IMG/VR virus record: IMGVR_UViG_3300037086_000360
Coordinates: 186,112-250,111 of that record
Strand: one strand, 5' to 3'
DNA length: 64,000 nt
Shown here: positions 1-37,143 of the stretch, one piece after another
Layout: each line of letters starts with the position of its first letter
Numbering within the stretch: the first letter of the stretch is position 1
Program-made: the position numbers and the translations under genes
The notes under the pieces: generated by a model
What the model was told of the DNA's origin: nothing
Database searches by the model: none
What the model saw: only the letters and a program-made list of their open reading frames with translations

Positions 1-2
1 AT

Positions 3-278
3 CATGATGGTAGAAAATACTACGAGATTCCATTTATCTCTTCTCAAGTAGATGAATGGATAGGCGGTCTTTTTACTAAGATTGTTGTTTCTGTTGATTC
101 TGAGGAAGAAGTTCTTCAGCTTCAAAAGAAAGCGGATGAAGCAGGTATCATAAACGCAGTAGTGACTGATGCCGGACTCACAGAATTCCATGGAATTCCA
201 ACCATCACTTGTATTTCAATTGGACCAGATGATCCAGAAAAAATTGACAAGATTACTGGAGAACTACCTCTTCTATGA
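3..278 (+). CDS. pth2: Peptidyl-tRNA hydrolase type 2, C-terminal part (runs off the left edge)
   Basis: Frame 3 reads ...WIGGLFTKIVVSVDSEEE...VVTDAGLTEFHGIPTITCISIGP...IDKITGELPLL*, with the Pth2 DAGxT and IGP motifs. Absent from the ORF track because its start lies upstream. Confidence 0.92.
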   Translation, partial: HDGRKYYEIPFISSQVDEWIGGLFTKIVVSVDSEEEVLQLQKKADEAGIINAVVTDAGLTEFHGIPTITCISIGPDDPEKIDKITGELPLL

Positions 279-499
279 TAGAAGAAGGGTTGGAATGGCT
301 GTCGCAGACAGATGAAGAAATTGTCGAAGAAGCCAAACGACTTTTATGTCCGTTGCCATTTACTCATTTTAACAATGTAACCGTACTTGATAAGAAGCAC
401 TTTCTTTTTTCTTTTGCCGACAATACATGCCAAATTGCAATTCTCGTAGGGGACATTGTTACGCTTGGACCAAGAATTCCGTTTGCTGAACGTACATGA
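275..499 (+). CDS. Hypothetical protein
   Basis: ATGA overlap with the pth2 stop; VEEAK.LL motif shared with 22243..22572. Confidence 0.55.
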   Translation: MIEEGLEWLSQTDEEIVEEAKRLLCPLPFTHFNNVTVLDKKHFLFSFADNTCQIAILVGDIVTLGPRIPFAERT

Positions 500-519
500 A
501 AAAAGAAAATTAAGAAGGG

Positions 520-672
520 AGATATGCAGCGGTAGATAGAGTTTCATCAACCCAAACCGGAAGTTGCCAGTTCGAATCTGGTCAAGTGAATGCATCAATA
601 AGTGGTTCACTTGTAGTTCAATTGGATAGAACGCCAGTCGTATTAGACTTTATTTAAAAAATTCGCATATTT
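520..672 (+). ncRNA. Circularly permuted tRNA-like RNA 1 (Arg-like; YrlA/Y-RNA-like architecture)
   Basis: T arm GCCAG-TTCGAAT-CTGGT (566-582) and acceptor 3' strand CAAGTGA (583-589) precede acceptor 5' strand TCACTTG (607-613) and D arm GTTC-AATTGGATA-GAAC (616-632). The ends pair: AGATATGC (520-527) with GCATATTT (665-672). Confidence 0.8.
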
Positions 673-679
673 TCTTTTA

Positions 680-916
680 ATGGACGAAGCCCTTTGTGCT
701 AAGAATCTAATGCTCGAAAGAGATTGTGCAAAATGTCGCATTGCGAGAGACACTTATCTCGATTTTGTCGATAATTGGAAACAAATCAATGAAGAGCTTC
801 AGAAGCAAGGATGCATTGGTTCATTTAAATTGAAATCAGATGGGACCGAATATGAGTTTTGGGGTCCGCAAGTTGGAGTTTGTGATCACTACATCCCTTT
901 CAAAGGGAAAGAATAA
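680..916 (+). CDS. Hypothetical Cys-containing protein
   Basis: 78-aa ORF filling the gap between the two permuted RNAs. Confidence 0.55.
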   Translation: MDEALCAKNLMLERDCAKCRIARDTYLDFVDNWKQINEELQKQGCIGSFKLKSDGTEYEFWGPQVGVCDHYIPFKGKE

Positions 917-945
917 GTGATTTCGACATAGAATAAAGATAATAC

Positions 946-1092
946 AGTATGCAGCGGGGTTAGAGTTACATCAATAGGAACCGGCGCCGTAAGGCATGTT
1001 GGTTCGAGACCAACCTCACTCAGTAATGGGTGAGTGGTGAAATTGGCAGACACACTGGTAAAAGAAAAAACTCTTTCTAGAATTCGCATACT
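946..1092 (+). ncRNA. Circularly permuted tRNA-like RNA 2 (Leu-like, long variable arm)
   Basis: Order is ACCGG, V-arm GCC-GTAA-GGC, T arm GTTGG-TTCGAGA-CCAAC, CTCACTC-A (980-1022), short loop, GGGTGAG, Leu-type D arm GTGAAATTGGCAGACAC, CTGGT (1028-1059). The ends pair: AGTATGC with GCATACT. Confidence 0.82.
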
Positions 1093-1131
1093 ATTTTATA
1101 AAGTCGCGGGAAACCGCAAAAGGAGAACAAA

Positions 1132-1398
1132 ATGTTTGACATCGTATTGGCTGCCATTTCAGCAGTCATCGCCGTCGGAGTAATCCAGTTCCTCAAGAAC
1201 GTTTGGAAGACGGCTCCTCGCTGGGTATGGCAAGTCGCTCTACCAGTCCTAGTCGTTGCACTAGTATTGGTTCTGTCACTCATTCCGGCATGGCTAGTGG
1301 TTATGCTTCTTGCTTTGGCTATTGCCCAGCTTGGGTATGAGACCATTGTCAAGTTGCTCATTAGCGTCTACCAGAAGTTTTTCCCACCAAAGGCCTAA
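1132..1398 (+). CDS. Small multi-TM membrane protein (holin-like)
   Basis: AAGGAG RBS; 88 aa with three hydrophobic segments. Confidence 0.55.
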   Translation: MFDIVLAAISAVIAVGVIQFLKNVWKTAPRWVWQVALPVLVVALVLVLSLIPAWLVVMLLALAIAQLGYETIVKLLISVYQKFFPPKA

Positions 1399-1408
1399 AT
1401 GATCATTT

Positions 1409-1440
1409 GAACTGGCTCCACACGGAGCCAGTTCTTTTCT
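1409..1440 (+). terminator. Intrinsic terminator
   Basis: GAACTGGCTCC-ACAC-GGAGCCAGTTC followed by TTTT. Confidence 0.8.
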
Positions 1441-1513
1441 CTAATAATAGTGCCCTTCAATAAGGTTGTTGAAGGCTCGTTTTATCTCCAACGTATATCG
1501 AAGGAGGTATTAC

Positions 1514-1954
1514 GTGAAAAAAATGTTTTTGTTTTTATTGCTTTTGGTAGCATCTTTTTCTTTACTGATAATGGCCTGTCCAACGACAGCCACATTAATT
1601 TCTGGATTCGTTGTCAGCGGAGCTGCCACGACGAATGGTTTCAGCATAGATTCAACTATTCCAGCCACTATATCCATAGTGGGCCCCCCAAATCTTTCTT
1701 TAAACATTCCATCTCCACCATCAACTTCAGTCTCTTATTCAGTTCCAAATGTTCCGGCCGGAACCTATTCATTCTCCATAAATCTTTCCACCGTTGGTAC
1801 GGTTGGAACTATTGGAGTTAATGAAACCATAGGTGGAGTGCCACAGAGTTATTTTACCGTTTCTCCTGGATCTCCAAATCTTACACTCATGTTATCTAGT
1901 TTAGTAATAAATTCAAACGAAACAATAAATATAAGTCTGACAAACGCGAGTTAG
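1514..1954 (+). CDS. Lipoprotein with a beta-rich (Ig-like?) domain
   Basis: AAGGAGG RBS before GTG at 1514; signal KKMFLFLLLLVASFSLLIMA-C ending in a lipobox Cys; Ser/Thr/Val-rich mature part. Confidence 0.65.
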   Translation: MKKMFLFLLLLVASFSLLIMACPTTATLISGFVVSGAATTNGFSIDSTIPATISIVGPPNLSLNIPSPPSTSVSYSVPNVPAGTYSFSINLSTVGTVGTIGVNETIGGVPQSYFTVSPGSPNLTLMLSSLVINSNETINISLTNAS

Positions 1955-2001
1955 GAGACCATAGGCGATTCGCATATTTATTTAGTAAATAGGAGGCACC
2001 T

Positions 2002-2202
2002 ATGAAAAGAGTCCTTATCAACAATATGATGTGCGATAATTGTGTGCATTTTGTCAAAAAGTCTTTGACGAAAGCTGGTGGAAACGTAACTGGTGCAGTA
2101 GTTGGAGAAGTTTTTGTCGATCGGCTTTCTGATGACCAAATAAGAAAGGCTGTAGAAGAGGACGACATCTACAAGGTCAGGGAGATTCGTGAGGTCAAGT
2201 AA
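2002..2202 (+). CDS. Heavy-metal-associated (HMA/CopZ-like) protein
   Basis: INNMMCDNCVHFVKKSL matches the MxCxxC motif; 66 aa. Confidence 0.75.
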   Translation: MKRVLINNMMCDNCVHFVKKSLTKAGGNVTGAVVGEVFVDRLSDDQIRKAVEEDDIYKVREIREVK

Positions 2203-2216
2203 AGAAAGATAACTAC

Positions 2217-2726
2217 ATGCCATTCAATCGTAAGTGCTCATGGTGTGGGGATCCTCTCACAGAGGATCCCTCTCTTTATCCTGATCAACATATAACTTCA
2301 CATGGCATTTGTGATAAATGTTCCTTTTATTTAGACGGCGAAAAAGCACGTCTTTCTGAATTTATTTCTTCTTTTGATCACCCAATCCTCGTAATGGATG
2401 CTGAAGTGAGGGCTGCTTTTGCGAACGATTCTCTTTTAAGCCTTCTTGCAAAGAGCTTAGAAAGCGTTGAAGGTAAGCTGGGTGGTGAAGTGATTGAATG
2501 TCAACATTCTCGTTCTCCAGAAAAATGTGGTAGAACTGATCATTGTTCTGGATGTGCGTTGAGAATGGCAGTTACACACACGATGAATACTGGTGAACCC
2601 CACGAGCATGTTAAATCATTTCATATCATAATGAATTCCGACAATACCACCAAGAAAGTAAATCTTTTCTTTTCTACAGAGAAAATAAACAACTATGTTT
2701 TGGTAACGATTGAAAAGATAGAATAG
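2217..2726 (+). CDS. PAS-domain protein with N-terminal Cys/His cluster
   Basis: CSWC...SHGICDKC followed by PILVMDAEVRAAFAN...GKLGGEVIEC, a PAS-like segment. Confidence 0.65.
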   Translation: MPFNRKCSWCGDPLTEDPSLYPDQHITSHGICDKCSFYLDGEKARLSEFISSFDHPILVMDAEVRAAFANDSLLSLLAKSLESVEGKLGGEVIECQHSRSPEKCGRTDHCSGCALRMAVTHTMNTGEPHEHVKSFHIIMNSDNTTKKVNLFFSTEKINNYVLVTIEKIE

Positions 2727-6006: not shown

Positions 6007-6534
6007 ATGGAAACCACCACTGTTGAAAAAAAGGTCTTCACCCCCAGGAATTACATTTGCAGCAAGGAGAAATACCTTGAGCTTAGGGCTCTTCAGAAAA
6101 AGACGATCGAAATTGGAAGACTCGATCGTCAGGCCAAGGCTGCATACATCGCTGCTCGTCGTAAGTTTTATCACGACAAGGGCATGACTGCTCCTAACCA
6201 TTGGGGCTACGATGAAAAGAAAAACGTAGCGATTGATTATGACAAGGAAAACGGGTTCAAATACGATGGACTTCAGTCTGGATTTTCCGACAAAGAGAAA
6301 GCCCGTTATTTGAACATCATTTACGGTATTGCCCGTGGAAAACCCTATGATAAAATTGAGCAAAGAATCACTGAGGGCAATGAGATCAGTGAATACCGTG
6401 TAGAGAAGTATTGTAAGCAGTTTGGAATCGATTTCTCCGCGGTAAAGGGTTTTATTTGGCCTTACAACACCGAGAAGGTTCTACCCAAAGATGGACTTGG
6501 CAAGACCACTCTCAAGATCACGAGGAAGGCATAA
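6007..6534 (+). CDS. Conserved phage hypothetical protein
   Basis: AAGGAG RBS; ARYLNIIYGIARGKPYDKIE motif. Confidence 0.65.
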   Translation: METTTVEKKVFTPRNYICSKEKYLELRALQKKTIEIGRLDRQAKAAYIAARRKFYHDKGMTAPNHWGYDEKKNVAIDYDKENGFKYDGLQSGFSDKEKARYLNIIYGIARGKPYDKIEQRITEGNEISEYRVEKYCKQFGIDFSAVKGFIWPYNTEKVLPKDGLGKTTLKITRKA

Positions 6535-6535
6535 A

Positions 6536-6898
6536 ATGGCAGATGAAGTCAAACAGGTGATTGTGGTAAATATGGCCGTTCCATTTCCTCTCGGAAGATT
6601 GATGGCTCAAATTGCTCATGCTTCCATGCTCAACATCGTTAATCGTGGAACTTGGAATGGAGACAAGTTTTCCATTGATGCGGACGATTTGGCCCTAAGA
6701 TTTTGGCTTAAGGATCATTATACAAAAGTCGTATGCAAGGCTTGGGGCAAGGAGCAGATGATGAAGATCAAAGCTGAAGCTGAGAAAAGAAAACTTTACG
6801 TTGCGCTAATGGAGGAAGAGGGGTTTATTACAGCACTCGCTATTGGTCCTGCGGATGTGAAAGATCTTTCTTTCACTGACACTTTAGCATTGGTATGA
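6536..6898 (+). CDS. Divergent Pth2-like protein
   Basis: KQVIVV...GRLMAQIAHAS...YTKVVCK...TALAIGP fits the Pth2 fold; GK is replaced by GR and DAGxT by EEEG. Confidence 0.8.
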   Translation: MADEVKQVIVVNMAVPFPLGRLMAQIAHASMLNIVNRGTWNGDKFSIDADDLALRFWLKDHYTKVVCKAWGKEQMMKIKAEAEKRKLYVALMEEEGFITALAIGPADVKDLSFTDTLALV

Positions 6899-6999: not shown

Positions 7000-7006
7000 T
7001 TTTCTT

Positions 7007-7082
7007 TCCGCTGTAGCTCGAATTTGGCAGAGCGTCTAGTCGAAAGATTAGAAGGTTGGAGGTTCAAGTCCTTCCGGCGGAG
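7007..7082 (+). ncRNA. tRNA-like RNA without an anticodon (GAAA tetraloop)
   Basis: Acceptor TCCGCTG/CGGCGGA, D and T arms nearly identical to 6927..6999; anticodon arm is TCTAGTC-GAAA-GATTAGA. Confidence 0.78.
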
Positions 7083-7105
7083 TTATTTTGCATATGTCTT
7101 TATAT

Positions 7106-7177
7106 CTCTTCGTAGCTCAACGGTAGAGCAAGAATCCCTAAAATTCTAGGTCGCGGGCTCGACACCCGCCGGAGAGG
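7106..7177 (+). tRNA. tRNA with CTA anticodon (amber suppressor-like), atypical C33 and T loop
   Basis: CTCTTCG/CGGAGAG acceptor, G73; AGAAT-CCCTAAA-ATTCT places CTA at 7138-7140; T loop CTCGACA. Confidence 0.72.
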
Positions 7178-7181
7178 CCTT

Positions 7182-7255
7182 GGTCCTGTAGCTCAGATGG
7201 TCAGAGCAACGGATTCTAACCCCGTCGGTCGAGGGTTCGAGCCCCTCCAGGATCT
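7182..7255 (+). tRNA. tRNA with CTA anticodon (amber suppressor-like)
   Basis: GGTCCTG/CAGGATC acceptor; ACGGA-TTCTAAC-CCCGT places CTA at 7216-7218 (A31.C39 mismatch); canonical T loop. Confidence 0.72.
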
Positions 7256-7756
7256 CTAGATAGTTGGATCGTGAAGTTTTTTGATTGCGTATGAGAATGC
7301 GCTATAAAAGTCTTTTGAAGAAACCCACTTATTCCTTAGAATTACCCTTTCACTTTCTTCATCGAAGAAAACACGGATCAAATCTTTAGCATTTTTCAAC
7401 ATCCATTTATCATATCTATGAATTCGTTTTGCCAAGTATGTGTAAGCAATGTCGAACATTAGTTCATAATCTTTTTCAGTTTGTACTGGTGGTAAATCTT
7501 TTTTGACTCTATATGGTCTGAGATTTCTCCACTTACTCGTTGCACTTGGCCAATTTGTTTCAGCAGAATAGCCTCTAATCACACCCTGCGCAAATACCGT
7601 GATTTTGTCATCAGCTACATCAGGATTGCCACTGAAGTCAATGTTTCCATGACTGAGTTGGGCTGGAGTGGTAGTATCTCGCCAACCAAGAGAAATGATA
7701 TCTTTATACGATGGCAACTGTTTGATTTTTTCATGGTCAAAATTGAAATGTTTCAT
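7256..7756 (-). CDS. Hypothetical protein (start MKHFNF)
   Basis: Lone minus-strand gene; a GTAAGATA motif lies just upstream on the minus strand. Confidence 0.65.
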   Translation of the reverse strand: MKHFNFDHEKIKQLPSYKDIISLGWRDTTTPAQLSHGNIDFSGNPDVADDKITVFAQGVIRGYSAETNWPSATSKWRNLRPYRVKKDLPPVQTEKDYELMFDIAYTYLAKRIHRYDKWMLKNAKDLIRVFFDEESERVILRNKWVSSKDFYSAFSYAIKKLHDPTI

Positions 7757-10761: not shown

Positions 10762-12594
10762 ATGAATCAACCAACTCCCAAAGCTCCCAACATGCGTAAA
10801 AATATCGCTATTGTGGCCATACTGCTAATAGGCTATTTTGTTTTTCAGTTTTTTATTGGAGGTGGAACTACTCCAGAAATCAGCTATAGTACTTTTAAAA
10901 AGGCCCTAATTGACGGTAGGATCCAACAAGTTTCTGTTTCAACTACTGAGATCCGTGGAGTAATGAAAGATAAAGAAATTGAGAAGCAGTTTTCAACCAT
11001 TCGCGTAGATGATCCAGAATTGACGAAATTACTCGAATCCAAAAATGTTCAATACTCTGGAAAAATCCAGAGCAACTTCTTATCCAATCTTTTATGGATC
11101 ATAATTCCTTTTGCTCTTCTATATTTCTTTTTCATGCGACAAACTGGTGGAGCGGGCACTAATGTTCTCTCATTTGGAAAGAGTAGGGCGAAACTCAACC
11201 AACCTCTGATTGGAAAAAAGATCTCATTTAAAGATGTCGCTGGAGTTGATGAGGCGAAAGAAGAGCTTCAAGAGGTTGTAGATTTTCTGAAGACTCCCCA
11301 GCGCTTTCAGCAATTGGGTGGAAGAATCCCTCGTGGAATCCTTTTAATTGGAGCTCCTGGCACCGGCAAGACACTTCTTGCAAGGGCGGTCGCCGGAGAG
11401 GCTGGGGTTCCATTTTTCAGTATTTCTGGATCTGAGTTTGTTGAAATGTTTGTAGGAGTTGGAGCTGCGAGAGTAAGAGATCTCTTCGCTCAAGCGATGT
11501 CAAAAGCCCCTTGTATCGTTTTTATCGACGAACTTGATGCCCTGGGAAGAGCTCGAGGATTTTCTCCAGTTGGTGGATTTGATGAGAGAGAGCAAACTCT
11601 CAACCAACTCCTTACAGAGATGGATGGTTTTGATACTCGAGTTGGCATCATCATCATGGCTGCTACGAACAGACCGGAGATTCTTGACTCAGCTCTCATG
11701 AGACCTGGAAGATTTGACCGACAGGTTCTTGTTGATAGGCCAGATCTTGTTGGTCGAGAAGCCATTCTCAAGGTTCATTCAGAAGGGATCAAGATGGCTG
11801 AGAACGTTGATCTCAAAACCATTGCTCAGAGAACTCCAGGATTTGTCGGAGCAGATCTCGCCAACATCATGAATGAGGCAGCCCTTCTTGCTGCAAGACG
11901 CAACAAGACTGAAGTTATGATGGATGAGTTTAGTGAGGCTATCGATCGTGTTGTTGCTGGTCTAGAAAAGAAAAAAAGGCTGATCAGTCCATCAGAGAAG
12001 AAAATTGTGGCTTATCACGAGGCTGGTCATGCCATTGTTTCCCATTTCTCTGGAAAGGGTGATGAAGTCCATAAGATTTCCATTATTCCTCGTGGAATTG
12101 CTGCTCTTGGCTACACAATCAATCTTCCTACAGAAGATCGTTACTTGATGACTCAGAAAGAGCTTGAAGCAAGGCTCGCTACTCTTCTTGGTGGAAGAGT
12201 CGCGGAAGAGCTCTTCATTCAGGACGTTTCCACTGGAGCCTCAAGTGACCTGATGAAGGCAACAGAGATTGCGAAAGCTATGGTCAAAGAATATGGAATG
12301 AGCTCTCTTGGACTTTCTTCTTATGAGAGACCATCAAATCCATTTCTCAAAGATAATTCTTTCTTCCCTTCTGAAAAAGATTATTCAGAAAAAGTAGCGG
12401 CACAAATTGATGAAGAAGTTAAAAACATGCTCATTAAAGCACACGATAAAGCTGTGGTTATCCTTAACACCAAGAAACAGCTTATGGAAGACTTGTCGAA
12501 ACTTCTTCTTGAAAAAGAAGTCGTAGAGAAAGATGAGTTTATAAAACTCATGACAGAAGAGAAGCTGGAAGAATTGCCGCGCGCAGAAGCATAG
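10762..12594 (+). CDS. ftsH: ATP-dependent zinc metalloprotease FtsH
   Basis: Two TM segments, Walker A GAPGTGKT, Walker [37 protein letters not shown]. Confidence 0.98.
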
Positions 12595-13738: not shown

Positions 13739-14836
13739 ATGGATGAATCTGACAAACAAGACCAGGAGTTCCCTCCAGGTACAGTGCCATCGGACCAGTG
13801 GAATGACTGGCGATGGCAAATGCGGAATCGAGTTAAAAACATTGAAGACATTAAGACATTGGGATTATGGAAAGATGACACATTGCCTAATCCAAAGCGT
13901 CTTCCCTTCACGGTAACCCCTTATTATTTGAAAGTCGCTCTCAATTCGAAAGCTCTTCAAAAAACTTTCGTGCCGAACATGAGTGAAAACATTGTGACAT
14001 CTGACTGTACGGATGATCCTCTTGCAGAAGAACATGACTCTCCTGTCAAATGCATCGTACATCGATATCCAGACAGAGTTCTGTTCCTTGCAACAGATCT
14101 TTGTGCTACTTATTGTCGCTATTGTACAAGAAGCCGAGTGATAGAGCAAAATGGATTTACTAAGTCTGAGTGGGAAAAGGGATTCGAATACATCAGAGAA
14201 CACGAAGAAGTTCGAGACGTTCTTATCTCTGGTGGAGACCCTCTCACATATGACGATGATAATCTTGAGTATTTGATTTCAAGCATTAGAGCAATTTCTC
14301 ATGTCGAAATCATAAGAATTGGTACCAAAGTTCCAGTCGTTCTTCCCCAAAGAATAACCCCAGAACTGGTGGCAATGCTTAAGAAGTATCATCCGTTATT
14401 CATGAGCATTCATTTCACCCATCCCGACGAACTCACAGAGGAATGTAAGACTGCATGCTTAATGCTTGCTGATGCAGGAATCCCTCTCGGAAGTCAAACA
14501 GTTTTGTTGAATGATGTGAATGATAATCTCTATATTCTGAAAGCTCTGTTCCAGGGTCTGTTAAAGATTAGAGTTCGCCCCTATTATCTCTATCAGTGTG
14601 ATGTTGTTCAAGGAGCTGCCCATTTTAGAACTCCTTTGGACGTGGGCATCAGGATGATTGAGGGATTAAGAGGATGGACTTCTGGATATGCTGTTCCACA
14701 ATTTGTAATTGACTTACCGAATGGTGGTGGAAAAACACCGGTCATTCCAAATTATGTGGTTGGAACTGAAGGAAAGAACATTGTCTTCAGAAATTATGAG
14801 GGCCAATCCTATCTCTTTCCCGATATAGCATCATGA
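13739..14836 (+). CDS. kamA: KamA-family radical SAM enzyme (lysine 2,3-aminomutase-like)
   Basis: WNDWRWQ, HRYPDR, CATYCRYC (CxxxCxxC), SGGDPL and the PLP-lysine motif GGGKTP. Confidence 0.93.
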   Translation: MDESDKQDQEFPPGTVPSDQWNDWRWQMRNRVKNIEDIKTLGLWKDDTLPNPKRLPFTVTPYYLKVALNSKALQKTFVPNMSENIVTSDCTDDPLAEEHDSPVKCIVHRYPDRVLFLATDLCATYCRYCTRSRVIEQNGFTKSEWEKGFEYIREHEEVRDVLISGGDPLTYDDDNLEYLISSIRAISHVEIIRIGTKVPVVLPQRITPELVAMLKKYHPLFMSIHFTHPDELTEECKTACLMLADAGIPLGSQTVLLNDVNDNLYILKALFQGLLKIRVRPYYLYQCDVVQGAAHFRTPLDVGIRMIEGLRGWTSGYAVPQFVIDLPNGGGKTPVIPNYVVGTEGKNIVFRNYEGQSYLFPDIAS

Positions 14837-16698: not shown

Positions 16699-17117
16699 TG
16701 CGACGATGGCTTACAGCATGGACACCTGAGTTAGCAAGAAAAGAAATGATAGCCAGGGAGCTTAGAAGAACTAGGCCCCTGGTTTCTTTTCCGCTTCTCA
16801 AAAAAGTGTACGACAAATTTGGAATCTTTTGGGTGACAATGCACCATGTTGAAGATATGGATGAACATCTCTGGAGTAAAATGCATGATCTAAATAGACA
16901 TGGACTCTTAGAGCTTTCTGAGTGGAAAAAAGAAATCAATCCAACTCCCTCAAGAGGTCAAAAACTTGCAAACTATTGGAGAGTAACTCCACTTGGTTTG
17001 ATAGCCCTTACAAAATTTTATAGTGTCAAAGATGAAGACGTACACAAAGTTAGCAAATATTTGTTGGACCCAGAAGGAGATAAGAATGAGGCGACTGTCT
17101 TGGCAAAACGATATTGA
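16698..17117 (+). CDS. Hypothetical protein
   Basis: Coupled to the HNH stop. Confidence 0.55.
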   Translation: MRRWLTAWTPELARKEMIARELRRTRPLVSFPLLKKVYDKFGIFWVTMHHVEDMDEHLWSKMHDLNRHGLLELSEWKKEINPTPSRGQKLANYWRVTPLGLIALTKFYSVKDEDVHKVSKYLLDPEGDKNEATVLAKRY

Positions 17118-17697
17118 ACCCGAGATTCCAGACAGAAAATTACCGATAAACAACAATAAAAAAGATGATGATCAACAATTGGTCGAACACATTGATGGTC
17201 ACATTTACTTTTATTCAGATGTGACTTCCCTATCAGTAATTAAACTCAACAAAGTAATAAGAGAAATCACAAACAATATGCTTCCATATAAAGAAGATGG
17301 ATTGGTGTTGAAGCTTCATATCAACAGTGATGGTGGAGTTCTTCTTGATGGACTTGCCGCTCTCGATTCAATTATTTCTAATGCACTTCCCATCCATACC
17401 TATGTAGAAGGTGGAGCTGCCTCAGCCGCCACTCTTATTTCAGTCGCAGGTAAAAAAAGATTCATGCACAGACACTCTTTCATGCTTATCCACCAAATGT
17501 CAAGCAGACTGTGGGGCAAGTATGAGGAGATAAAAGACGACAAAGAAAACTGTGATCGATTCATGAAAATGATCAAGGATATTTACAAGGAATATACAAA
17601 AGTTCCTATGAAAAAGATAGATGAAATTCTCAAACATGATTTGTGGTTTGACGCAGATCAATGTCTTGAATATGGGATGATAGATGAGATAGTCTAG
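17086..17697 (+). CDS. ClpP-like serine protease
   Basis: INSDGG, GGAASAATLI (catalytic Ser), MLIHQ (His), DLWFDADQCLEYGMIDEI. Confidence 0.9.
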   Translation: MRRLSWQNDIEPEIPDRKLPINNNKKDDDQQLVEHIDGHIYFYSDVTSLSVIKLNKVIREITNNMLPYKEDGLVLKLHINSDGGVLLDGLAALDSIISNALPIHTYVEGGAASAATLISVAGKKRFMHRHSFMLIHQMSSRLWGKYEEIKDDKENCDRFMKMIKDIYKEYTKVPMKKIDEILKHDLWFDADQCLEYGMIDEIV

Positions 17698-23693: not shown

Positions 23694-23968
23694 GGGGCCG
23701 TAAAGGTTTCGACTGAACAGTGTTGGGCTTAGCCGAAGTTTTTCTACAAAATAGACGCGAATAACTTCGCTCTCGCGGCATAGCCGCTCACCTAACGGCA
23801 TTTAGTTTTTTGCTTCTAGCTGTTGGGTAACAAAAAGCAAAGAACGGGTTCATTCAATGAAACTCCCGTAAAAAAGCGAATTGTGGTATTTAGAATCCAC
23901 CACTCTACGGTTCTACGGCAGGCGAAGGTCCTTTGTTCAGGACGGGATTTCGATTATCCCCGGCTCCA
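23694..23968 (+). ncRNA. ssrA: tmRNA, 275 nt, tag (A)ANNFALAA*
   Basis: GGGGCCG...TTCGAC 5' end; GGGAT-TTCGATT-ATCCC-CGGCTCC-A 3' end with G3.U70; AAAATAGAC upstream of GCG AAT AAC TTC GCT CTC GCG GCA TAG (23757-23783). Confidence 0.92.
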
Positions 23969-23977
23969 TTTCCAGAC

Positions 23978-33776: not shown

Positions 33777-34883
33777 ATGCCGATTACGATCAAGGAACTA
33801 AAAGTCAATCTCAAGCTCGTCCTCAAAAAGGGAACGAAACAGCCTATCACCCCATATATTTGGGGAAAGCCGGGTATCGGAAAGTCGCAAGCTGTCAAGC
33901 AGATCGCCGATGAAATGGGAATTGGTTTCATCGACCTTCGTCTTTCACAGCTTGAATCTTCGGACCTTCGTGGTATCCCTGTTCCTGATATGGTGGCGGG
34001 TATCGCTCGTTGGCTTCCGCCCGAATTCATCCCCTTTCAGGGTGTAAAGGTTTACCAAAATACTTCCGGCATTCTCCTTCTCGACGAATTGAACCGTGCA
34101 AGAACCGACGTTCTTCAGGCCGCCTTCCAGCTTGTTCTCGACCGCCAGGTCGGTATGCACAAGCTCATGGATTCCTGGTACATCGTTGCCGCCGGCAACC
34201 TCGGTATGGAAGACAAGACTGACGTCAATGAGTTCGACTCTGCCCTCAAGAACAGGTTCATCCACTTCACAGTGGATGTCAATCTCGACACTTGGGTGAC
34301 ATGGGCCCAGAAGGCGAATGTTCATCCTGATGTCATCAACTATCTCCAGGGAAAGCCCAATCACCTTTTCTACACGGTGAAGGAAGATGACAATGTGTTC
34401 GTCACTCCTCGTTCTTGGGAAAAGTTTTCCGACATTCTCAAGCAGAATCCGGATGTCGATCCCAAGGAAATCACCCAGGCCATCGGTTCCGCAATCATCA
34501 ATGGTTGTGCCGGCCACTTCATCAAGTACCTCGAGTCCAAGGAGATCATCTCTCCGAAAGACATCATCGACAAATATGACGAGGTGAAAAACAAGATCAA
34601 AGCACTTCAGCGTGATCAGGTTTACCAGCTCAACACCGAGTTGGCTTCCTACATCGTGAAGAGTTTGAATAAGGACGCCAACAAACCTCGCAGGACCAAG
34701 GCCCTCGAGTCCGTCCATCAGTACTGTCATGATCACCTGGAGAAGGACATCTACATCGCGTTCCTCCAGTCTCTCACCAAGTCGTGCAATGGAGCTTCTC
34801 CGGTGAATGACTTCATGGACCTCTACCTGAAGAAATACATCGAGGATTCCAAACTGGTCATCAGCATCCTCAAGAAGAACTAA
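33777..34883 (+). CDS. MoxR-like AAA+ ATPase (system 2)
   Basis: WGKPGIGKS, IDLRLSQ, LLLDELNR, IVAAGN, ALKNRF, TPRSW. Confidence 0.93.
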   Translation: MPITIKELKVNLKLVLKKGTKQPITPYIWGKPGIGKSQAVKQIADEMGIGFIDLRLSQLESSDLRGIPVPDMVAGIARWLPPEFIPFQGVKVYQNTSGILLLDELNRARTDVLQAAFQLVLDRQVGMHKLMDSWYIVAAGNLGMEDKTDVNEFDSALKNRFIHFTVDVNLDTWVTWAQKANVHPDVINYLQGKPNHLFYTVKEDDNVFVTPRSWEKFSDILKQNPDVDPKEITQAIGSAIINGCAGHFIKYLESKEIISPKDIIDKYDEVKNKIKALQRDQVYQLNTELASYIVKSLNKDANKPRRTKALESVHQYCHDHLEKDIYIAFLQSLTKSCNGASPVNDFMDLYLKKYIEDSKLVISILKKN

Positions 34884-34892
34884 CCTCAAGCC

Positions 34893-34918
34893 GGGAGGGA
34901 GTTTAGAGACTCCCTCCC
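34893..34918 (+). terminator. Hairpin, probable terminator
   Basis: GGGAGGGAGT-TTAGAG-ACTCCCTCCC followed by TTGTTGT. Confidence 0.65.
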
Positions 34919-34946
34919 TTGTTGTATAATCTACATAGAGGTATTC

Positions 34947-35312
34947 ATGAAGCCGACAAAGAGATTTTCTCCAACCGATTTTTTCGAGACGTATATTGTT
35001 GGAGATTCTGCCGACCAAGCAAAAATACTTCTTCTTCTGACAGCGATGAATGAGGAAGAACTTGCAAAGTTTGCTACTAGGATTTCTTCTTATGTCGTCA
35101 AAAGCAAAGATATTGAAGAAACTGAACACGAGAAGTATTCTCTTGTTCTCCATCGATTTTGTGAGGATCTGAACGATTTTTACTTTAACAAGCTTTTGCG
35201 AGCGCTTATCCAAGCATGTCATTCGTCAAATCCTGTAAATCCATTTGTAGAGCATTATCTTAGCAAGTTTTCTGACGATGCAAAACGAGTTGTAATGACT
35301 CTCAAGGCATAG
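34947..35312 (+). CDS. Stand-alone paralog of the system-2 ATPase C-terminal helical domain
   Basis: SPTDFFETY vs SPKDIIDKY; SSYVVKS vs ASYIVKS; PVNPFVEHYLSKF vs PVNDFMDLYLKKY. Confidence 0.8.
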   Translation: MKPTKRFSPTDFFETYIVGDSADQAKILLLLTAMNEEELAKFATRISSYVVKSKDIEETEHEKYSLVLHRFCEDLNDFYFNKLLRALIQACHSSNPVNPFVEHYLSKFSDDAKRVVMTLKA

Positions 35313-35331
35313 TTGATATAAAGAGGAAATA

Positions 35332-37143
35332 ATGGCAGTCACCAAAGAACAAATCAAAGAAAACGCCAAGAAGATGATTTCAGTCATCGACAAGCTGACT
35401 AAGGTCAAGAGGGTCCGTCTCCCGGCTCGCGTTGAAGCAGTGTCGGTGAAGTGGGTTCGTGATGCTCCTTTCTTCTCGGAGTTCTTGATGAGGTTCAACT
35501 ACTTTGAGACTGAAGCAATTCCTACAATGGGAGTTAATTGCGTCAAGGGACGTATCAACCTCTATATCAACACTACGTTTATGAATGGTGGTGGTGAGTT
35601 CTACAAGTTTGACAAAGAAGGCAAACCCATTCTCAAGATGAAGGGTGGAAAACCACTTCTTGACGATCAGGGAAATGTCATCTACGAGATGGAGCCTTGG
35701 AAGGGTCTCAATGATGACCAGCTTGAGGCAGTTCTTCTTCACGAAATCATGCATCTCATTCGTTGTCACCATGAGAGGACGCTTGAAGACCCTTATGTTT
35801 TCAACGTCGCTGGGGACATGCTTATCAATGACGATTTGAAAACAATGCAGATCGGAAATCGTAAACCAACACTTCCTGACGGCGCCGTCTATCTCGACAT
35901 GGCAAAGAAGGAAGGGTATAAGGATGAGCCCATCACTGAAAAGGTGTATGTGTGGCTCATTGATCAGCGTCAGAAATACATGAATGCAATGCAGGACCTG
36001 ATGAAACAGCAGGGAAAGCAGAGCGGCCAAAAACAGCAGTGTTCTCATTGTGGTGGTTCAGGAAAAGTTGATCAGGAATGCTCTGAGTGCGGTGGAAAGG
36101 GAACTACGAAGCCGAAGTGCCCAACCTGTGGTGGAACTGGCCAGAAGCAACAAAACCAGGGAAATCAGAAGCAGGATGGAAAGGGAAAGGGCAAAGATCA
36201 GAAAGATAAGGGCGACGGAAACCAACAGGGAGAAGGCCAAGGTCAGGGTGATCAGAAACAGGATCAGCAGGGTAGTGGTCAGGGACAGGGAGATCAGGAA
36301 GGTGATGGACAGGGAAGCTCTTGCCCCGACTGCCATGGAACTGGAAAAGACCAGAGCGGACAGGAAGTTCCTTGTCCAAGCTGCGGTGGAGGCGGTCACG
36401 AAGAAGGAAAATGCCCTCACTGTGGCGGAAGCGGCAATCAACGCGGTTCCGACTTGTTTGATGCAATGTACGGTTCCAAGATCGATGACCACTCTTCAAT
36501 GGAACAGAATGATGAACTGACTGAGGCAACTATTAGGGAAATCATCGAAACTGGAAAGATCCGCGGATGGGGCAACATTAGCGGAGAAGCGGTCGAGAAA
36601 CTCGAAGAACTGACAAAACCATCCAAGATCTCTTGGAAGCAGATTCTCCGAAGGTATCTCACTGCGGCCATCCATGACGTTGGAAACATCTACGAAAACT
36701 CTTGGTCCAAGAGAAACAGAAGGCAGCTTCCACTTCCTGGAATCAAGAAGCTCAACAACCGTGTCATCATCGGAATTGATACGTCTGGATCCATTGGTAA
36801 GAAGGAATTTCAGATGTTCTTCACCGAAGTCGAGAGGATTGTCAAAGACACGTCCAACATCATTCTTCTCCAGTGGGATACGGAAATCAAAGATGTGAAA
36901 CTTGGCTACAAGAAGGGCGACTGGAAGAAAATCGCAATCAAGGGCAGAGGAGGCACGGACGTCCAGAAGACTTTCGACTGGATGGTCGAAGAGAAATACA
37001 CCACGTATCCACTCATCATGTTTACGGACGGTTATTTTGACCACAACTTCGACACTCGTGCTGTCAAGGTCGTATGGTGTGTCACCCAGAGCGAGAATAA
37101 GATCCCCGGGGGAGACAATATCTACATCGACATAGATGAATAG
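35332..37143 (+). CDS. DUF2201 metallopeptidase-vWA protein with inserted CxxCxGxG zinc-finger repeats (system 2)
   Basis: LLHEIMH, NVAGDMLIN, six CxxCxGxG repeats, IDTSGS, GRGGT, MFTDG. Confidence 0.9.
   Translation: MAVTKEQIKENAKKMISVIDKLTKVKRVRLPARVEAVSVKWVRDAPFFSEFLMRFNYFETEAIPTMGVNCVKGRINLYINTTFMNGGGEFYKFDKEGKPILKMKGGKPLLDDQGNVIYEMEPWKGLNDDQLEAVLLHEIMHLIRCHHERTLEDPYVFNVAGDMLINDDLKTMQIGNRKPTLPDGAVYLDMAKKEGYKDEPITEKVYVWLIDQRQKYMNAMQDLMKQQGKQSGQKQQCSHCGGSGKVDQECSECGGKGTTKPKCPTCGGTGQKQQNQGNQKQDGKGKGKDQKDKGDGNQQGEGQGQGDQKQDQQGSGQGQGDQEGDGQGSSCPDCHGTGKDQSGQEVPCPSCGGGGHEEGKCPHCGGSGNQRGSDLFDAMYGSKIDDHSSMEQNDELTEATIREIIETGKIRGWGNISGEAVEKLEELTKPSKISWKQILRRYLTAAIHDVGNIYENSWSKRNRRQLPLPGIKKLNNRVIIGIDTSGSIGKKEFQMFFTEVERIVKDTSNIILLQWDTEIKDVKLGYKKGDWKKIAIKGRGGTDVQKTFDWMVEEKYTTYPLIMFTDGYFDHNFDTRAVKVVWCVTQSENKIPGGDNIYIDIDE

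What the first reader, a model, noticed from the sequence alone, without database searches (positions are those of the whole stretch)
520..1092. Two circularly permuted tRNA-like RNAs sharing one conserved scaffold
Seen: each element has the tRNA 3' half (T arm, acceptor 3' strand) before the 5' half (acceptor 5' strand, D arm), with the acceptor stem closed by a loop. Both sit in the same scaffold: terminal stem (AGATATGC/GCATATTT vs AGTATGC/GCATACT, with a compensatory A-T to G-C change), then AGCGG, a second stem (TAGAGTTT/AGACTTTA vs AGAGTT/AACTCT) and CATCAA. The tRNA modules have different origins: Arg-like (A20) and Leu-like (V-arm, A73). Known: YrlA-class bacterial Y RNAs use this permuted tRNA module on a Ro60-binding stem. 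Inference: these are phage Y-RNA-like tRNA mimics built by grafting different tRNAs onto one scaffold. Standard tRNA finders would miss them.
Basis: partly seen in the sequence, partly recalled or inferred. Interest (0 to 1): 0.9.

Follow-up and report, generated by a model that had tools for sequence, protein, structure and literature searches.

The report
Phage Y RNAs that mimic tRNAs
Two ~150-base genes in a 250-kb phage genome encode Ro60-type "Y RNAs" whose middle folds like a tRNA with its two ends joined; they belong to a known but poorly annotated phage RNA family, and are unusual mainly because they lie about 104 kb from the phage's own Ro60 gene.

Summary
Window 518-674 and 943-1095 (+) each hold a circularly permuted tRNA-like module (V region, T arm, capped acceptor hairpin, D arm). 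Both modules sit in one shared scaffold: P1 stem, AGCGG, P2 stem, CAUCAA, and AAUUC before the P1 3' strand.

The Y-RNA interpretation is supported. A covariance model built from element 1 alone found full-length homologs directly upstream of Ro60/TROVE genes, on the same strand, in Bacillus phage G and other viral contigs. A family model then gave 124 hits in Ro60 neighbourhoods, all on the Ro60 strand, against almost none in 982 kb of control loci. Across 47 members, 30 of 32 base pairs show compensatory changes.

The source contig encodes a phage-G-type Ro60 (49% identity), but about 104 kb away. Four more copies lie just upstream of the window, so this is a six-gene array in a tRNA/PTH2/RRM island. 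The D arms are nearest to tRNA-Arg and tRNA-Leu, and other arrays also mix tRNA types.

Phage Y RNA-like RNAs, including those of phage G, have been described since 2014. These are therefore new members of a known kind. The unusual points are the separation from Ro60 and the non-canonical D arms. Ro60 binding and function are inferred, not shown.

The parts
518..674 (+). Y RNA-like gene el1 (whole element, ends as matched by the models)
   Evidence: R1 was built from it. R2 scores it 118.8 bits. MFE -39.6 kcal/mol, z -2.9. Its ends are inferred from P1, not mapped.
520..527 (+). el1 P1 5' strand (AGATATGC); pairs with 665-672
   Evidence: P1 has double changes at 8 of 8 pairs across 47 family members.
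528..532 (+). el1 AGCGG junction motif (J12)
   Evidence: Present in all six copies of this phage and as (A/U)GCGG in phage G. In RNAalifold its G pairs with the C of the 3' UUC in 40 of 47 members.
537..544 (+). el1 P2 5' strand (TAGAGTTT); pairs with 645-652
   Evidence: The outer 6 bp are conserved in the family, with 6 of 6 pairs showing double changes.
545..550 (+). el1 CAUCAA loop motif, at the place of the family-invariant UACUUC(G)
   Evidence: It is probably the counterpart of the CGAA/GNCGAA Ro60-contact motif of PMC4201824 and PMC12135203. That equivalence is inferred.
556..638 (+). el1 permuted tRNA-like module: ACCGG, V loop, T arm 566-582, capped acceptor hairpin 583-613, D arm 616-632, CCAGT
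   Evidence: Python descriptor scan. Rfam YrlA 30.9 bits over positions 559-635. The D arm is nearest to tRNA-Arg(ACG).
639..664 (+). el1 3' side: CGUAUU loop, P2 3' strand 645-652, junction ending AAUUC
   Evidence: CGUAUUA is shared with the Ro60-adjacent homologs L107 and L109. The ...UUC before P1' is conserved in the family.
665..672 (+). el1 P1 3' strand (GCATATTT)
943..1095 (+). Y RNA-like gene el2 (whole element)
   Evidence: R1 35.9 bits, E 3e-5. R2 95.8 bits. MFE -48.7 kcal/mol, z -4.3.
946..974 (+). el2 5' scaffold: P1 5' 946-952, AGCGG 953-957, P2 5' 962-967, CAUCAA 969-974
980..1059 (+). el2 permuted tRNA-like module: ACCGG, 13-nt V arm 985-997, T arm 998-1014, acceptor hairpin 1015-1034 (GUAA-capped), D arm 1037-1053 (3-bp stem, 11-nt loop), CUGGU
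   Evidence: Descriptor scan with no mismatches. The D arm is 1 edit from tRNA-Leu, and the next isotype is much further.
1060..1092 (+). el2 3' scaffold: loop, P2 3' 1069-1074, junction ending AAUUC, P1 3' 1086-1092

Best explanation
el1 and el2 are two genes of a six-gene array of Ro60-type Y RNAs (YrlA-like) in a phage of about 250 kb.

Each is a small non-coding RNA of about 150 nt. Its 5' and 3' ends pair to form P1. P1, the AGCGG junction, P2 and the U(A/U)CAUC loop together form the platform that the phage's own Ro60 ring protein binds.

The apical part is a tRNA elbow mimic made of a T arm, a capped acceptor stem and a D arm. It has no anticodon loop and no free CCA end, so it cannot decode. 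It serves instead as a stable effector or handle module. By analogy with characterised Ro60/Y RNA/PNPase complexes, it recruits an exoribonuclease or other tRNA-binding proteins and so remodels RNA turnover during infection.

What is shown here:
- the structure;
- homology to Ro60-adjacent RNAs;
- covariation;
- a Ro60 gene in the same genome.

What is inferred:
- transcription as discrete RNAs;
- Ro60 binding;
- the identity of the partner of the tRNA-like module;
- the biological effect.
For: 1. Anatomy was confirmed.

2. The single-sequence model R1 found full-length matches next to TROVE genes on the same strand. These are:
- L061 3971-4118, 200 nt upstream of a TROVE ORF;
- phage G L097 240-401 and 1717-1805, upstream of gp540;
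- L107 and L109.

3. Phage G carries six copies with the same layout: P1, (A/U)GCGG, P2, UACUUC, a variable insert, P2', AAU.AUC, P1'.

4. The family model R2 gave 124 hits at E<0.01 in 716 kb of Ro60 loci, all on the Ro60 strand and often in tandem arrays. In 982 kb of control loci the only full-length hits were at L061, which has Ro60, and at L018/L019/L021.

5. Covariation across 47 members was strong. 93.3% of cells are paired against 58.5% in shuffles. 30 of 32 pairs show changes on both sides. The score is 0.854 against at most 0.17 when partners are slid. RNAalifold recovers the same helices.

6. The same contig encodes a 550-aa TROVE protein 49% identical to phage G gp540, on the same strand.

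7. Literature supports the class. YrlA RNAs have exactly this T/acceptor/D order and occur in phages (PMC4201824). A phage Ro60 binds phage Yrl RNAs and host PNPase (PMC12135203).
Against: - The Ro60 gene is about 104 kb from the array and has no Y RNA within 3.5 kb of it. The published criterion is within 4 kb.
- The strict GNCGAAN0-1G motif is absent.
- The family-invariant UACUUC reads U(A/U)CAUC in all six copies of this phage.
- The Rfam YrlA score is below threshold (30.9 against 69), and el2 is not hit at all. The Ro60-adjacent L061 and phage G RNAs also score only 36-42 bits.
- The alignments used for covariation were fitted to the model.
- There are no expression data.
- An RRM-domain protein gene sits inside the array and could be an alternative partner.
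Confidence: 0.75

Rival explanations
1. The elements are Ro60-independent tRNA decoys or sponges. The closed tRNA elbows would soak up a host or phage tRNA-binding factor, such as a modification enzyme, RNase P, or a defence nuclease that reads the tRNA body. The conserved single-stranded motifs would bind another protein, for example the RRM protein encoded within the array.
For: The array lies 104 kb from Ro60, in an island of tRNA genes, two PTH2 genes and an RRM protein gene. The UACUUC motif is altered to CAUC in every copy of this phage. The D arms depart from the near-invariant YrlA D arm towards specific tRNA types. L018/L019/L021 carry a family member inside a tRNA array, and the L061 Ro60 query found no TROVE match within the 6 kb of flank fetched on each side.
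Against: The scaffold is plainly homologous to RNAs that sit beside Ro60 genes in dozens of viral contigs. The phage keeps an intact Ro60 of the matching clade. The RRM gene has no counterpart in the other loci fetched.
Confidence: 0.13
2. The elements are cis-acting 5'-UTR or processing structures. The tRNA-like folds would punctuate a polycistronic transcript, through RNase P or RNase Z-type cleavage, or regulate the small ORFs that start 8-40 nt downstream.
For: Each element sits just upstream of a small ORF on the same strand (ORF 680-916 and ORF 1132-1398). No convincing promoter or terminator flanks them. M. smegmatis YrlA can be cut by RNase P (PMC4201824).
Against: In other phages the same RNAs form tandem arrays with no ORFs between them. 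In most family members the acceptor stems are capped by short loops of about 4-5 nt, which leaves no leader for RNase P. The conserved P1 that joins both ends argues for a discrete RNA.
Confidence: 0.06
3. The elements are permuted or split tRNA genes that mature into decoding tRNAs, or they are decayed remnants of adjacent tRNA genes.
For: The order is 3' half then 5' half. The D arms are 1 edit from real tRNA-Arg and tRNA-Leu.
Against: There is no anticodon loop, because the anticodon stem continues into a conserved scaffold. The acceptor strands of one element pair perfectly with each other, which adjacent unrelated tRNAs do not. Real adjacent tRNAs gave only partial model hits. The scaffold covaries.
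Confidence: 0.01

Closest known systems
YrlA (Rfam RF02553; Salmonella Typhimurium and Mycobacterium smegmatis Y RNA-like RNAs, Chen et al. 2014, PMC4201824)
   Same: It has the same module order: V region, T arm, acceptor-like stem-loop, D arm. The module sits on a stem formed by the 5' and 3' ends. tRNA tertiary nucleotides are kept. There is a conserved 5'-strand motif in the internal loop. Its partner is a Ro60/TROVE protein, and a Ro60 gene is present in this genome.
   Different: The strict GNCGAAN0-1G motif is absent and CAUCAA or CAUCGAC stands in its place. The Rfam score is sub-threshold. The genes lie 104 kb from Ro60 rather than within 4 kb. el1 and el2 lack the near-invariant GCUC/GAGC D stem.
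Bacillus phage G Y RNA-like array upstream of gp540 (TROVE); cited as known in PMC12135203
   Same: It has the same scaffold motif by motif: P1, (A/U)GCGG, P2 xAGxGU, UAC(U/A)UC, insert, P2', A-rich junction ending UC, P1'. There are six copies per genome, some with and some without a tRNA-like module. Its Ro60 is 49% identical to the one in this contig.
   Different: The phage G array abuts the Ro60 gene, whereas here it is 104 kb away and interleaved with protein genes. Phage G has one tRNA-like copy among six. Here three have full modules (el0, el1, el2) and one has a partial module.
Thermus phage phiLo Yrl1/Yrl2 with phiRo60 (PMC12135203)
   Same: These are phage-encoded Y RNA-like RNAs with a terminal stem and an internal loop carrying a CGAA-type motif. 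Ro60 binding and a ternary complex with host PNPase were shown experimentally. This is the best functional precedent.
   Different: The word 'tRNA-like' does not occur in the main text of that paper. Those genes are adjacent to Ro60. Sequence relatedness to el1 and el2 was not tested here.
Deinococcus radiodurans Yrn1 (the RYPER complex: Ro60, Y RNA and PNPase)
   Same: It is a Y RNA that tethers Ro60 to PNPase and contains a T-arm-like element.
   Different: Its module has a different orientation and it lacks a full D arm. It is regarded as an independent lineage (PMC4201824).
Circularly permuted tRNA genes (Cyanidioschyzon merolae) and two-piece tmRNA genes
   Same: The 3' half of a tRNA-like fold is encoded before the 5' half.
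   Different: Those RNAs mature into molecules with free, chargeable acceptor ends, and the permuted tRNAs have an anticodon. Here the acceptor is capped and there is no anticodon loop.

Membership tests
YrlA / bacterial and phage Y RNA (Chen et al. 2014) | tRNA-like domain in the order (V), T arm, acceptor-like stem-loop, D arm, with conserved T-loop and D-loop nucleotides | tested here: met
   Descriptor scan. Rfam YrlA local match for el1 over model positions 24-84. G18G19, T54-C56, G53:C61 and A15:U48 are read directly from the sequence.
YrlA / bacterial and phage Y RNA (Chen et al. 2014) | 5' and 3' ends form a stem that carries an internal loop (the Ro60-binding platform), supported by covariation | tested here: met
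   P1 shows double changes at 8 of 8 pairs and P2 at 6 of 6 pairs across 47 members. RNAalifold agrees. The six paralogs in this phage have unrelated P1 sequences that all pair.
YrlA / bacterial and phage Y RNA (Chen et al. 2014) | GNCGAAN0-1G (CGAA) motif near the 5' end | tested here: not met
   There is no exact match in el1 or el2. The equivalent loop reads CAUCAA. Paralog el0 reads CAUCGAC, and the Ro60-adjacent family members read UACUUCG(N). This is a divergent variant rather than the published consensus.
YrlA / bacterial and phage Y RNA (Chen et al. 2014) | Encoded within about 4 kb of a Ro60/TROVE gene on the same strand | tested here: not met
   No TROVE was found among the ORFs examined from 6.5 kb upstream to 63 kb downstream. 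The contig's TROVE gene is on the same strand but about 104 kb away.
YrlA / bacterial and phage Y RNA (Chen et al. 2014) | Rfam RF02553 gathering score (69 bits) | tested here: not met
   el1 scores 30.9 bits and el2 has no hit. Ro60-adjacent RNAs of L061 and phage G also score only 42.1 and 36.2 bits. The threshold therefore does not discriminate in phages.
YrlA / bacterial and phage Y RNA (Chen et al. 2014) | Physical association with Ro60; tRNA-type modifications (Psi55, D) | not testable with these tools
   This needs co-immunoprecipitation or EMSA, and modification mapping.
Phage-G-type Ro60-associated Y RNA family (defined here by models R1 and R2) | Full-length match to a model, with homologs adjacent to Ro60 on the same strand | tested here: met
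   R1 was built from el1 only. It hits phage G at 42.2 bits, L107 at 54.1, L109 at 47.9 and L061 at 33.2, all upstream of TROVE genes. R2 gives 124 same-strand hits in Ro60 loci against near-zero in controls.
Phage-G-type Ro60-associated Y RNA family (defined here by models R1 and R2) | Invariant UACUUC after the P2 5' strand | tested here: inconclusive
   About 43 of 47 aligned members have UACUUC. el1 and el0 have UUCAUC, and el2 and L176 have UACAUC. The variant is shared by all six copies of this phage.
Functional (decoding) permuted tRNA gene | An anticodon loop can be reconstituted and free acceptor ends are produced | tested here: not met
   The anticodon-like stem runs into the scaffold with no 7-nt loop. 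The acceptor is capped by GUAA in el2 and by a stem extension in el1.

The most novel reading that the evidence does not exclude
The tRNA-like modules may be isotype-specific mimics rather than interchangeable stabilisers. They are Arg-like, Leu-like with a V arm, and Glu-like in other arrays. On this reading, phage Y RNA arrays are panels that direct Ro60 and an exonuclease to factors that read the body of particular tRNAs, such as synthetases, modification enzymes or tRNA-targeting defence nucleases, or that act as decoys for those factors. In this phage the array has been uncoupled from Ro60 and moved into a translation-takeover island with tRNAs, amber-suppressor tRNAs, PTH2 and an RRM protein. 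It may there work with a different protein partner.
Probability: 0.12. Interest if true: 0.75.

Novelty: new member of a known kind. Interest (0 to 1): 0.42.

Why it matters
Y RNAs and Ro60 are conserved from bacteria to humans, and Ro60 is a major lupus and Sjogren autoantigen. The role of the tRNA-like module is still unknown.

This locus and the family model derived from it show four things:
- Phage Y RNA genes are far more numerous than standard annotation reveals. Rfam's threshold misses all of those tested here.
- They commonly occur as tandem arrays.
- They can sit far from Ro60.
- Their tRNA-like modules come in several tRNA flavours.

That gives a concrete comparative handle, module type against phage or host, on what the tRNA mimic is for. 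It also cautions against searches restricted to Ro60 neighbourhoods. For this particular window the finding is an annotation gain rather than a new principle.

Tried and rejected
Searches that led nowhere:
- Exact scaffold patterns in IMG/VR found only the source contig. A looser pattern gave 15 other loci, and none matched the model, so they were chance hits.
- A DNA search of the first 6 kb against isolated phages matched only the tRNA-Asn gene.
- The neighbouring small ORF 680-916 had no relatives in IMG/VR.
- The RRM protein and the small ORFs 275-499, 680-916 and 1132-1398 had no relatives in the fetched loci.
- The closest PTH2 in 5.8 billion proteins is 64% identical. The one identical hit is the same phage in another assembly, with no sequence differences. 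Orthologous covariation from close relatives was therefore not available.
- The L061 Ro60 used as a single query found only itself. It gave no tblastn hit in the window. An alignment of four phage Ro60 proteins was needed to find the contig's own gene.

Hits and ideas rejected:
- L037 54-213 and L073 1219-1291 are pairs of adjacent real tRNAs.
- A MAFFT alignment of el1 and el2 misaligns the modules because of the V arm. Model-based alignments were used instead.
- ATTCGCATA as a general promoter motif: there are only three exact copies, and copies with up to 2 mismatches occur at chance level.
- The sigma-70 and terminator scans gave nothing convincing around the elements.

Not done:
- The metagenome and genome collection scans were not used. 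No pattern specific enough could be written, and the question was settled without them.

Full report
**1. The observation**

Reading window 1-2400 confirms both elements on the + strand, in short gaps between small same-strand ORFs.

Element 1 (el1, 518-674) runs as follows:
- P1 5' strand AGATATGC
- AGCGG
- a spacer
- P2 5' strand TAGAGTTT
- CATCAA
- a 5-nt linker
- the module: ACCGG, AAGTT, T arm GCCAG-TTCGAAT-CTGGT, acceptor hairpin CAAGTGAA-(15 nt)-TTCACTTG, TA, D arm GTTC-AATTGGATA-GAAC, G, CCAGT
- CGTATT
- P2 3' strand
- an A-rich junction ending AATTC
- P1 3' strand GCATATTT

Element 2 (el2, 943-1095) has the same order. It differs in having a 13-nt V arm, a GUAA-capped acceptor stem, and a 3-bp D stem with an 11-nt loop.

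Further checks:
- Pairings were verified by script.
- Both folds are more stable than dinucleotide shuffles (z -2.9 and -4.3).
- The shared blocks TATGCAGCGG, TAGAGTT, CATCAA, AACCGG and AATTCGCATA appear in the same order in both elements.
- ARAGORN and the Rfam tRNA model do not report the elements.
- A strict permuted-tRNA descriptor written for this purpose finds both.

**2. First classification**

A permissive Rfam scan matched the el1 module to YrlA (RF02553). The score was 30.9 bits, E 1e-4, over model positions 24-84 only, and below the 69-bit threshold. el2 was not hit.

The window is the last 64 kb of IMG/VR contig 3300037086_000360, which is 250,111 bp long. Around the elements lie:
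- tRNA genes;
- a PTH2 peptidyl-tRNA hydrolase and an RRM-domain protein just upstream;
- two tRNAs with CUA anticodons and a tmRNA further on.

None of the window ORFs scanned against Pfam is a TROVE or RtcB protein. The 6 kb upstream holds only small ORFs and tRNAs.

**3. Finding relatives**

Exact sequence patterns and neighbouring proteins found nothing but the phage itself.

A covariance model built from el1 alone with the hand-derived structure (R1) detected el2 at 35.9 bits. Among 74 phage loci fetched through PTH2, it also gave a full-length match in L061. That match lies 200 nt upstream, on the same strand, of a 514-aa ORF with a TROVE domain. It is therefore a textbook phage YrlA. 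Rfam scores it only 42 bits, again over the module alone. This shows that Rfam's threshold does not discriminate in phages.

Using that Ro60 to pull annotated phage records, R1 then hit Bacillus phage G upstream of gp540 (TROVE). One hit was 42.2 bits with a tRNA-like module. The other was 23.4 bits without one.

Reading that region shows six tandem RNAs with the layout P1, (A/U)GCGG, P2 (xCAGU), UACUUC(R)A, a variable insert, P2', AAU.AUC, P1'. This is the el1/el2 scaffold, motif for motif.

**4. More copies in the same phage**

An unfiltered R1 search of the DNA just upstream of the window (L001, where position = window + 2030) found four further copies:
- L001 640-711, short;
- L001 726-805, short;
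- L001 830-971, with a T-arm-like hairpin only;
- L001 1332-1472 (el0), with a full type-I tRNA-like module and a GAAA-capped acceptor.

Their P1 sequences are unrelated to one another, yet all pair. All keep (G)UAGCGG and GUUACAUC or GUUUCAUC.

The phage thus has a six-gene array, in this order: three copies, ORF100, el0, the RRM gene, PTH2, ORF74, el1, ORF78, el2.

**5. The Ro60 gene**

An alignment of four phage Ro60 proteins, used to scan IMG/VR, returned 80 loci. One of them is the source contig itself. L106 carries a 550-aa ORF at contig positions about 81,126-82,778, on the same strand. It is 49% identical to phage G gp540 over residues 11-541. Its Pfam TROVE score is 45 bits against a cut-off of 23.

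The array starts near contig position 184,700, and el1 is at about 186,629. The Y RNA genes are therefore about 104 kb from Ro60. An unfiltered family-model search found no Y RNA within 3.5 kb of the Ro60 gene.

**6. The family**

A model built from nine R1 matches (R2) gave 124 hits at E<0.01 in 716 kb of Ro60 neighbourhoods. Every hit is on the Ro60 strand. Most lie within about 1-2 kb of the gene, and many form tandem arrays of three to six.

In 982 kb of control loci the only full-length hits were the three beside the L061 Ro60 and one RNA in L018/L019/L021.

On 47 members with E<1e-8:
- 93.3% of cells are paired, against 58.5% in column shuffles and at most 47% when partners are slid.
- 30 of 32 pairs show changes on both sides.
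- P1 shows this at 8 of 8 pairs, P2 at 6 of 6, the acceptor-like stem at 8 of 8 and the T stem at 4 of 5.

One caveat is that the alignment was fitted to the model. Even so, the paralogs' unrelated P1 sequences and an RNAalifold prediction on the same alignment agree with it. RNAalifold adds a G:C pair between the conserved G of (A/U)GC and the C of the 3' UUC. This leaves a bulged base next to P1.

**7. tRNA flavour**

Most members carry the D arm UAGCUCAGUUGGUAGAGC. This matches the published remark that YrlA D and T stems are nearly invariant (PMC4201824). el1 and el2 do not carry it.

Against 456 distinct phage tRNAs from the fetched loci:
- The el1 D arm is nearest to tRNA-Arg(ACG), at 1 edit.
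- The el2 D arm is nearest to tRNA-Leu, at 1 edit. The mean of the best three Leu matches is 1.3, against 3.7 for the next isotype.

Leu-like, Glu/Asp-like and other D arms also occur in Ro60-adjacent arrays, in L107, L109, L121, L144, L151, L170 and L173.

**8. Mechanism**

By homology, el1 and el2 are Y RNAs. The paired ends and conserved junctions form the Ro60 platform, and the closed tRNA elbow is the effector module.

Three precedents apply:
- In Deinococcus and Salmonella, the Y RNA tethers Ro60 to PNPase.
- YrlA is modified by TruB and DusA, and in M. smegmatis it is cut by RNase P (PMC4201824).
- A Thermus phage Ro60 binds its own Yrl RNAs and host PNPase (PMC12135203).

For this phage, transcription, Ro60 binding and the partner of the module are all inferred.

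Three features leave room for a Ro60-independent role: the 104-kb separation, the CAUC variant of the invariant loop motif, and the RRM gene inside the array. I put that at about 0.13. Cis-regulatory and true-tRNA readings are unlikely, for the reasons given under the rival explanations.

**9. Novelty**

Phage Y RNA-like RNAs have been reported since 2014, with phage G named among them. These are new members of a known kind.

The following may be new, though I could not verify it against the literature held:
- the size of the family in viral metagenomes;
- the array organisation;
- the uncoupling from Ro60;
- the diversity of tRNA types among the modules.

Interest is moderate.

Noticed in passing
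L001 640-711, 726-805, 830-971, 1332-1472 (upstream of the window; L001 position = window + 2030): Four more copies of the same scaffold lie here. Two are short with no tRNA module, one has only a T-arm-like hairpin, and one (el0) has a full tRNA-like module with a GAAA-capped acceptor containing tandem G.A pairs. With el1 and el2 they make a six-gene array.
   Followed up: yes
L106 3414-5066 (same contig, about positions 81,126-82,778): The phage's Ro60/TROVE gene is 550 aa and 49% identical to Bacillus phage G gp540. It has no Y RNA within 3.5 kb on either side. It is flanked by a weak methyltransferase-domain match (below the Pfam cut-off) and a class II aldolase-domain ORF.
   Followed up: yes
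window 1968-1976: A third exact copy of ATTCGCATA(TTT), the junction plus P1 3' strand of el1, lies in the gap before ORF 2002-2202. It has no 5' partner and no model hit. Three copies are seen against 0.44 expected. It may be a relic of a seventh element or a separate signal.
   Followed up: partly
window 7006-7256: Three clustered tRNAs lie here. Two have a CUA anticodon (amber suppressors, which ARAGORN labels Pyl). One has an anticodon that ARAGORN reads as four bases (GAAA). A second PTH2 paralog (ORF 6491-6898) lies directly upstream. Whether TAG is recoded in part of this genome was not examined.
   Followed up: no
window 23694-23971: A phage-encoded tmRNA with the tag peptide ANNFALAA (Rfam 60.6 bits).
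   Followed up: no
L001 1596-1880 and 1910-2308 (window 1-278 holds the PTH2 3' end): A single-domain RRM protein (Pfam RRM_1, E 1.7e-24) and a PTH2 peptidyl-tRNA hydrolase are encoded inside the Y RNA array. The RRM gene has no counterpart in the other loci fetched.
   Followed up: partly
L064 5730-5870 and L056 5560-5690: Two unrelated phage contigs share a tandem of two permuted tRNA-Glu-like modules, each with a T arm, a short capped acceptor and a GUCGUCUAG...GGAC D arm. They lie just upstream of PTH2, and the L061 Ro60 query found no TROVE match in the fetched flanks. A further conserved CCUGGCAGGG block follows. The Y RNA model does not hit them at E<0.01.
   Followed up: partly
L018/L019/L021 5373-5494: A family member (R2 43 bits, full length) sits between tRNA genes in a tRNA array 600 nt upstream of PTH2. 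The L061 Ro60 query found no TROVE match within the 6 kb of flank fetched on each side. This is a second case of a Y RNA-like gene away from Ro60.
   Followed up: partly
L037 2282-2741, 3466-3729, 10869-11209: One 218-kb viral contig carries a GOLLD RNA (187 bits), a bacterial-type RNase P RNA (100 bits) and a tmRNA (134 bits), beside more than 20 tRNAs.
   Followed up: no
alignment A9, columns 15 and 218 (el1: G529 and C664): RNAalifold predicts a conserved G:C pair (40 of 47 members) between the G of (A/U)GC and the C of the 3' ...UUC. This extends P1 past a bulged base, which recalls the bulged helix that Ro60 recognises in animal Y RNAs.
   Followed up: partly
window 10762-12594, 17023-17697, 13739-14836, 33777-37143: The phage encodes an FtsH-like AAA protease, a ClpP-like protease, a radical-SAM lysine-2,3-aminomutase-like protein, and a MoxR-type AAA protein followed by a DUF2201/VWA protein. 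It also has HNH, GIY-YIG and TnsA-like homing-endonuclease genes.
   Followed up: no
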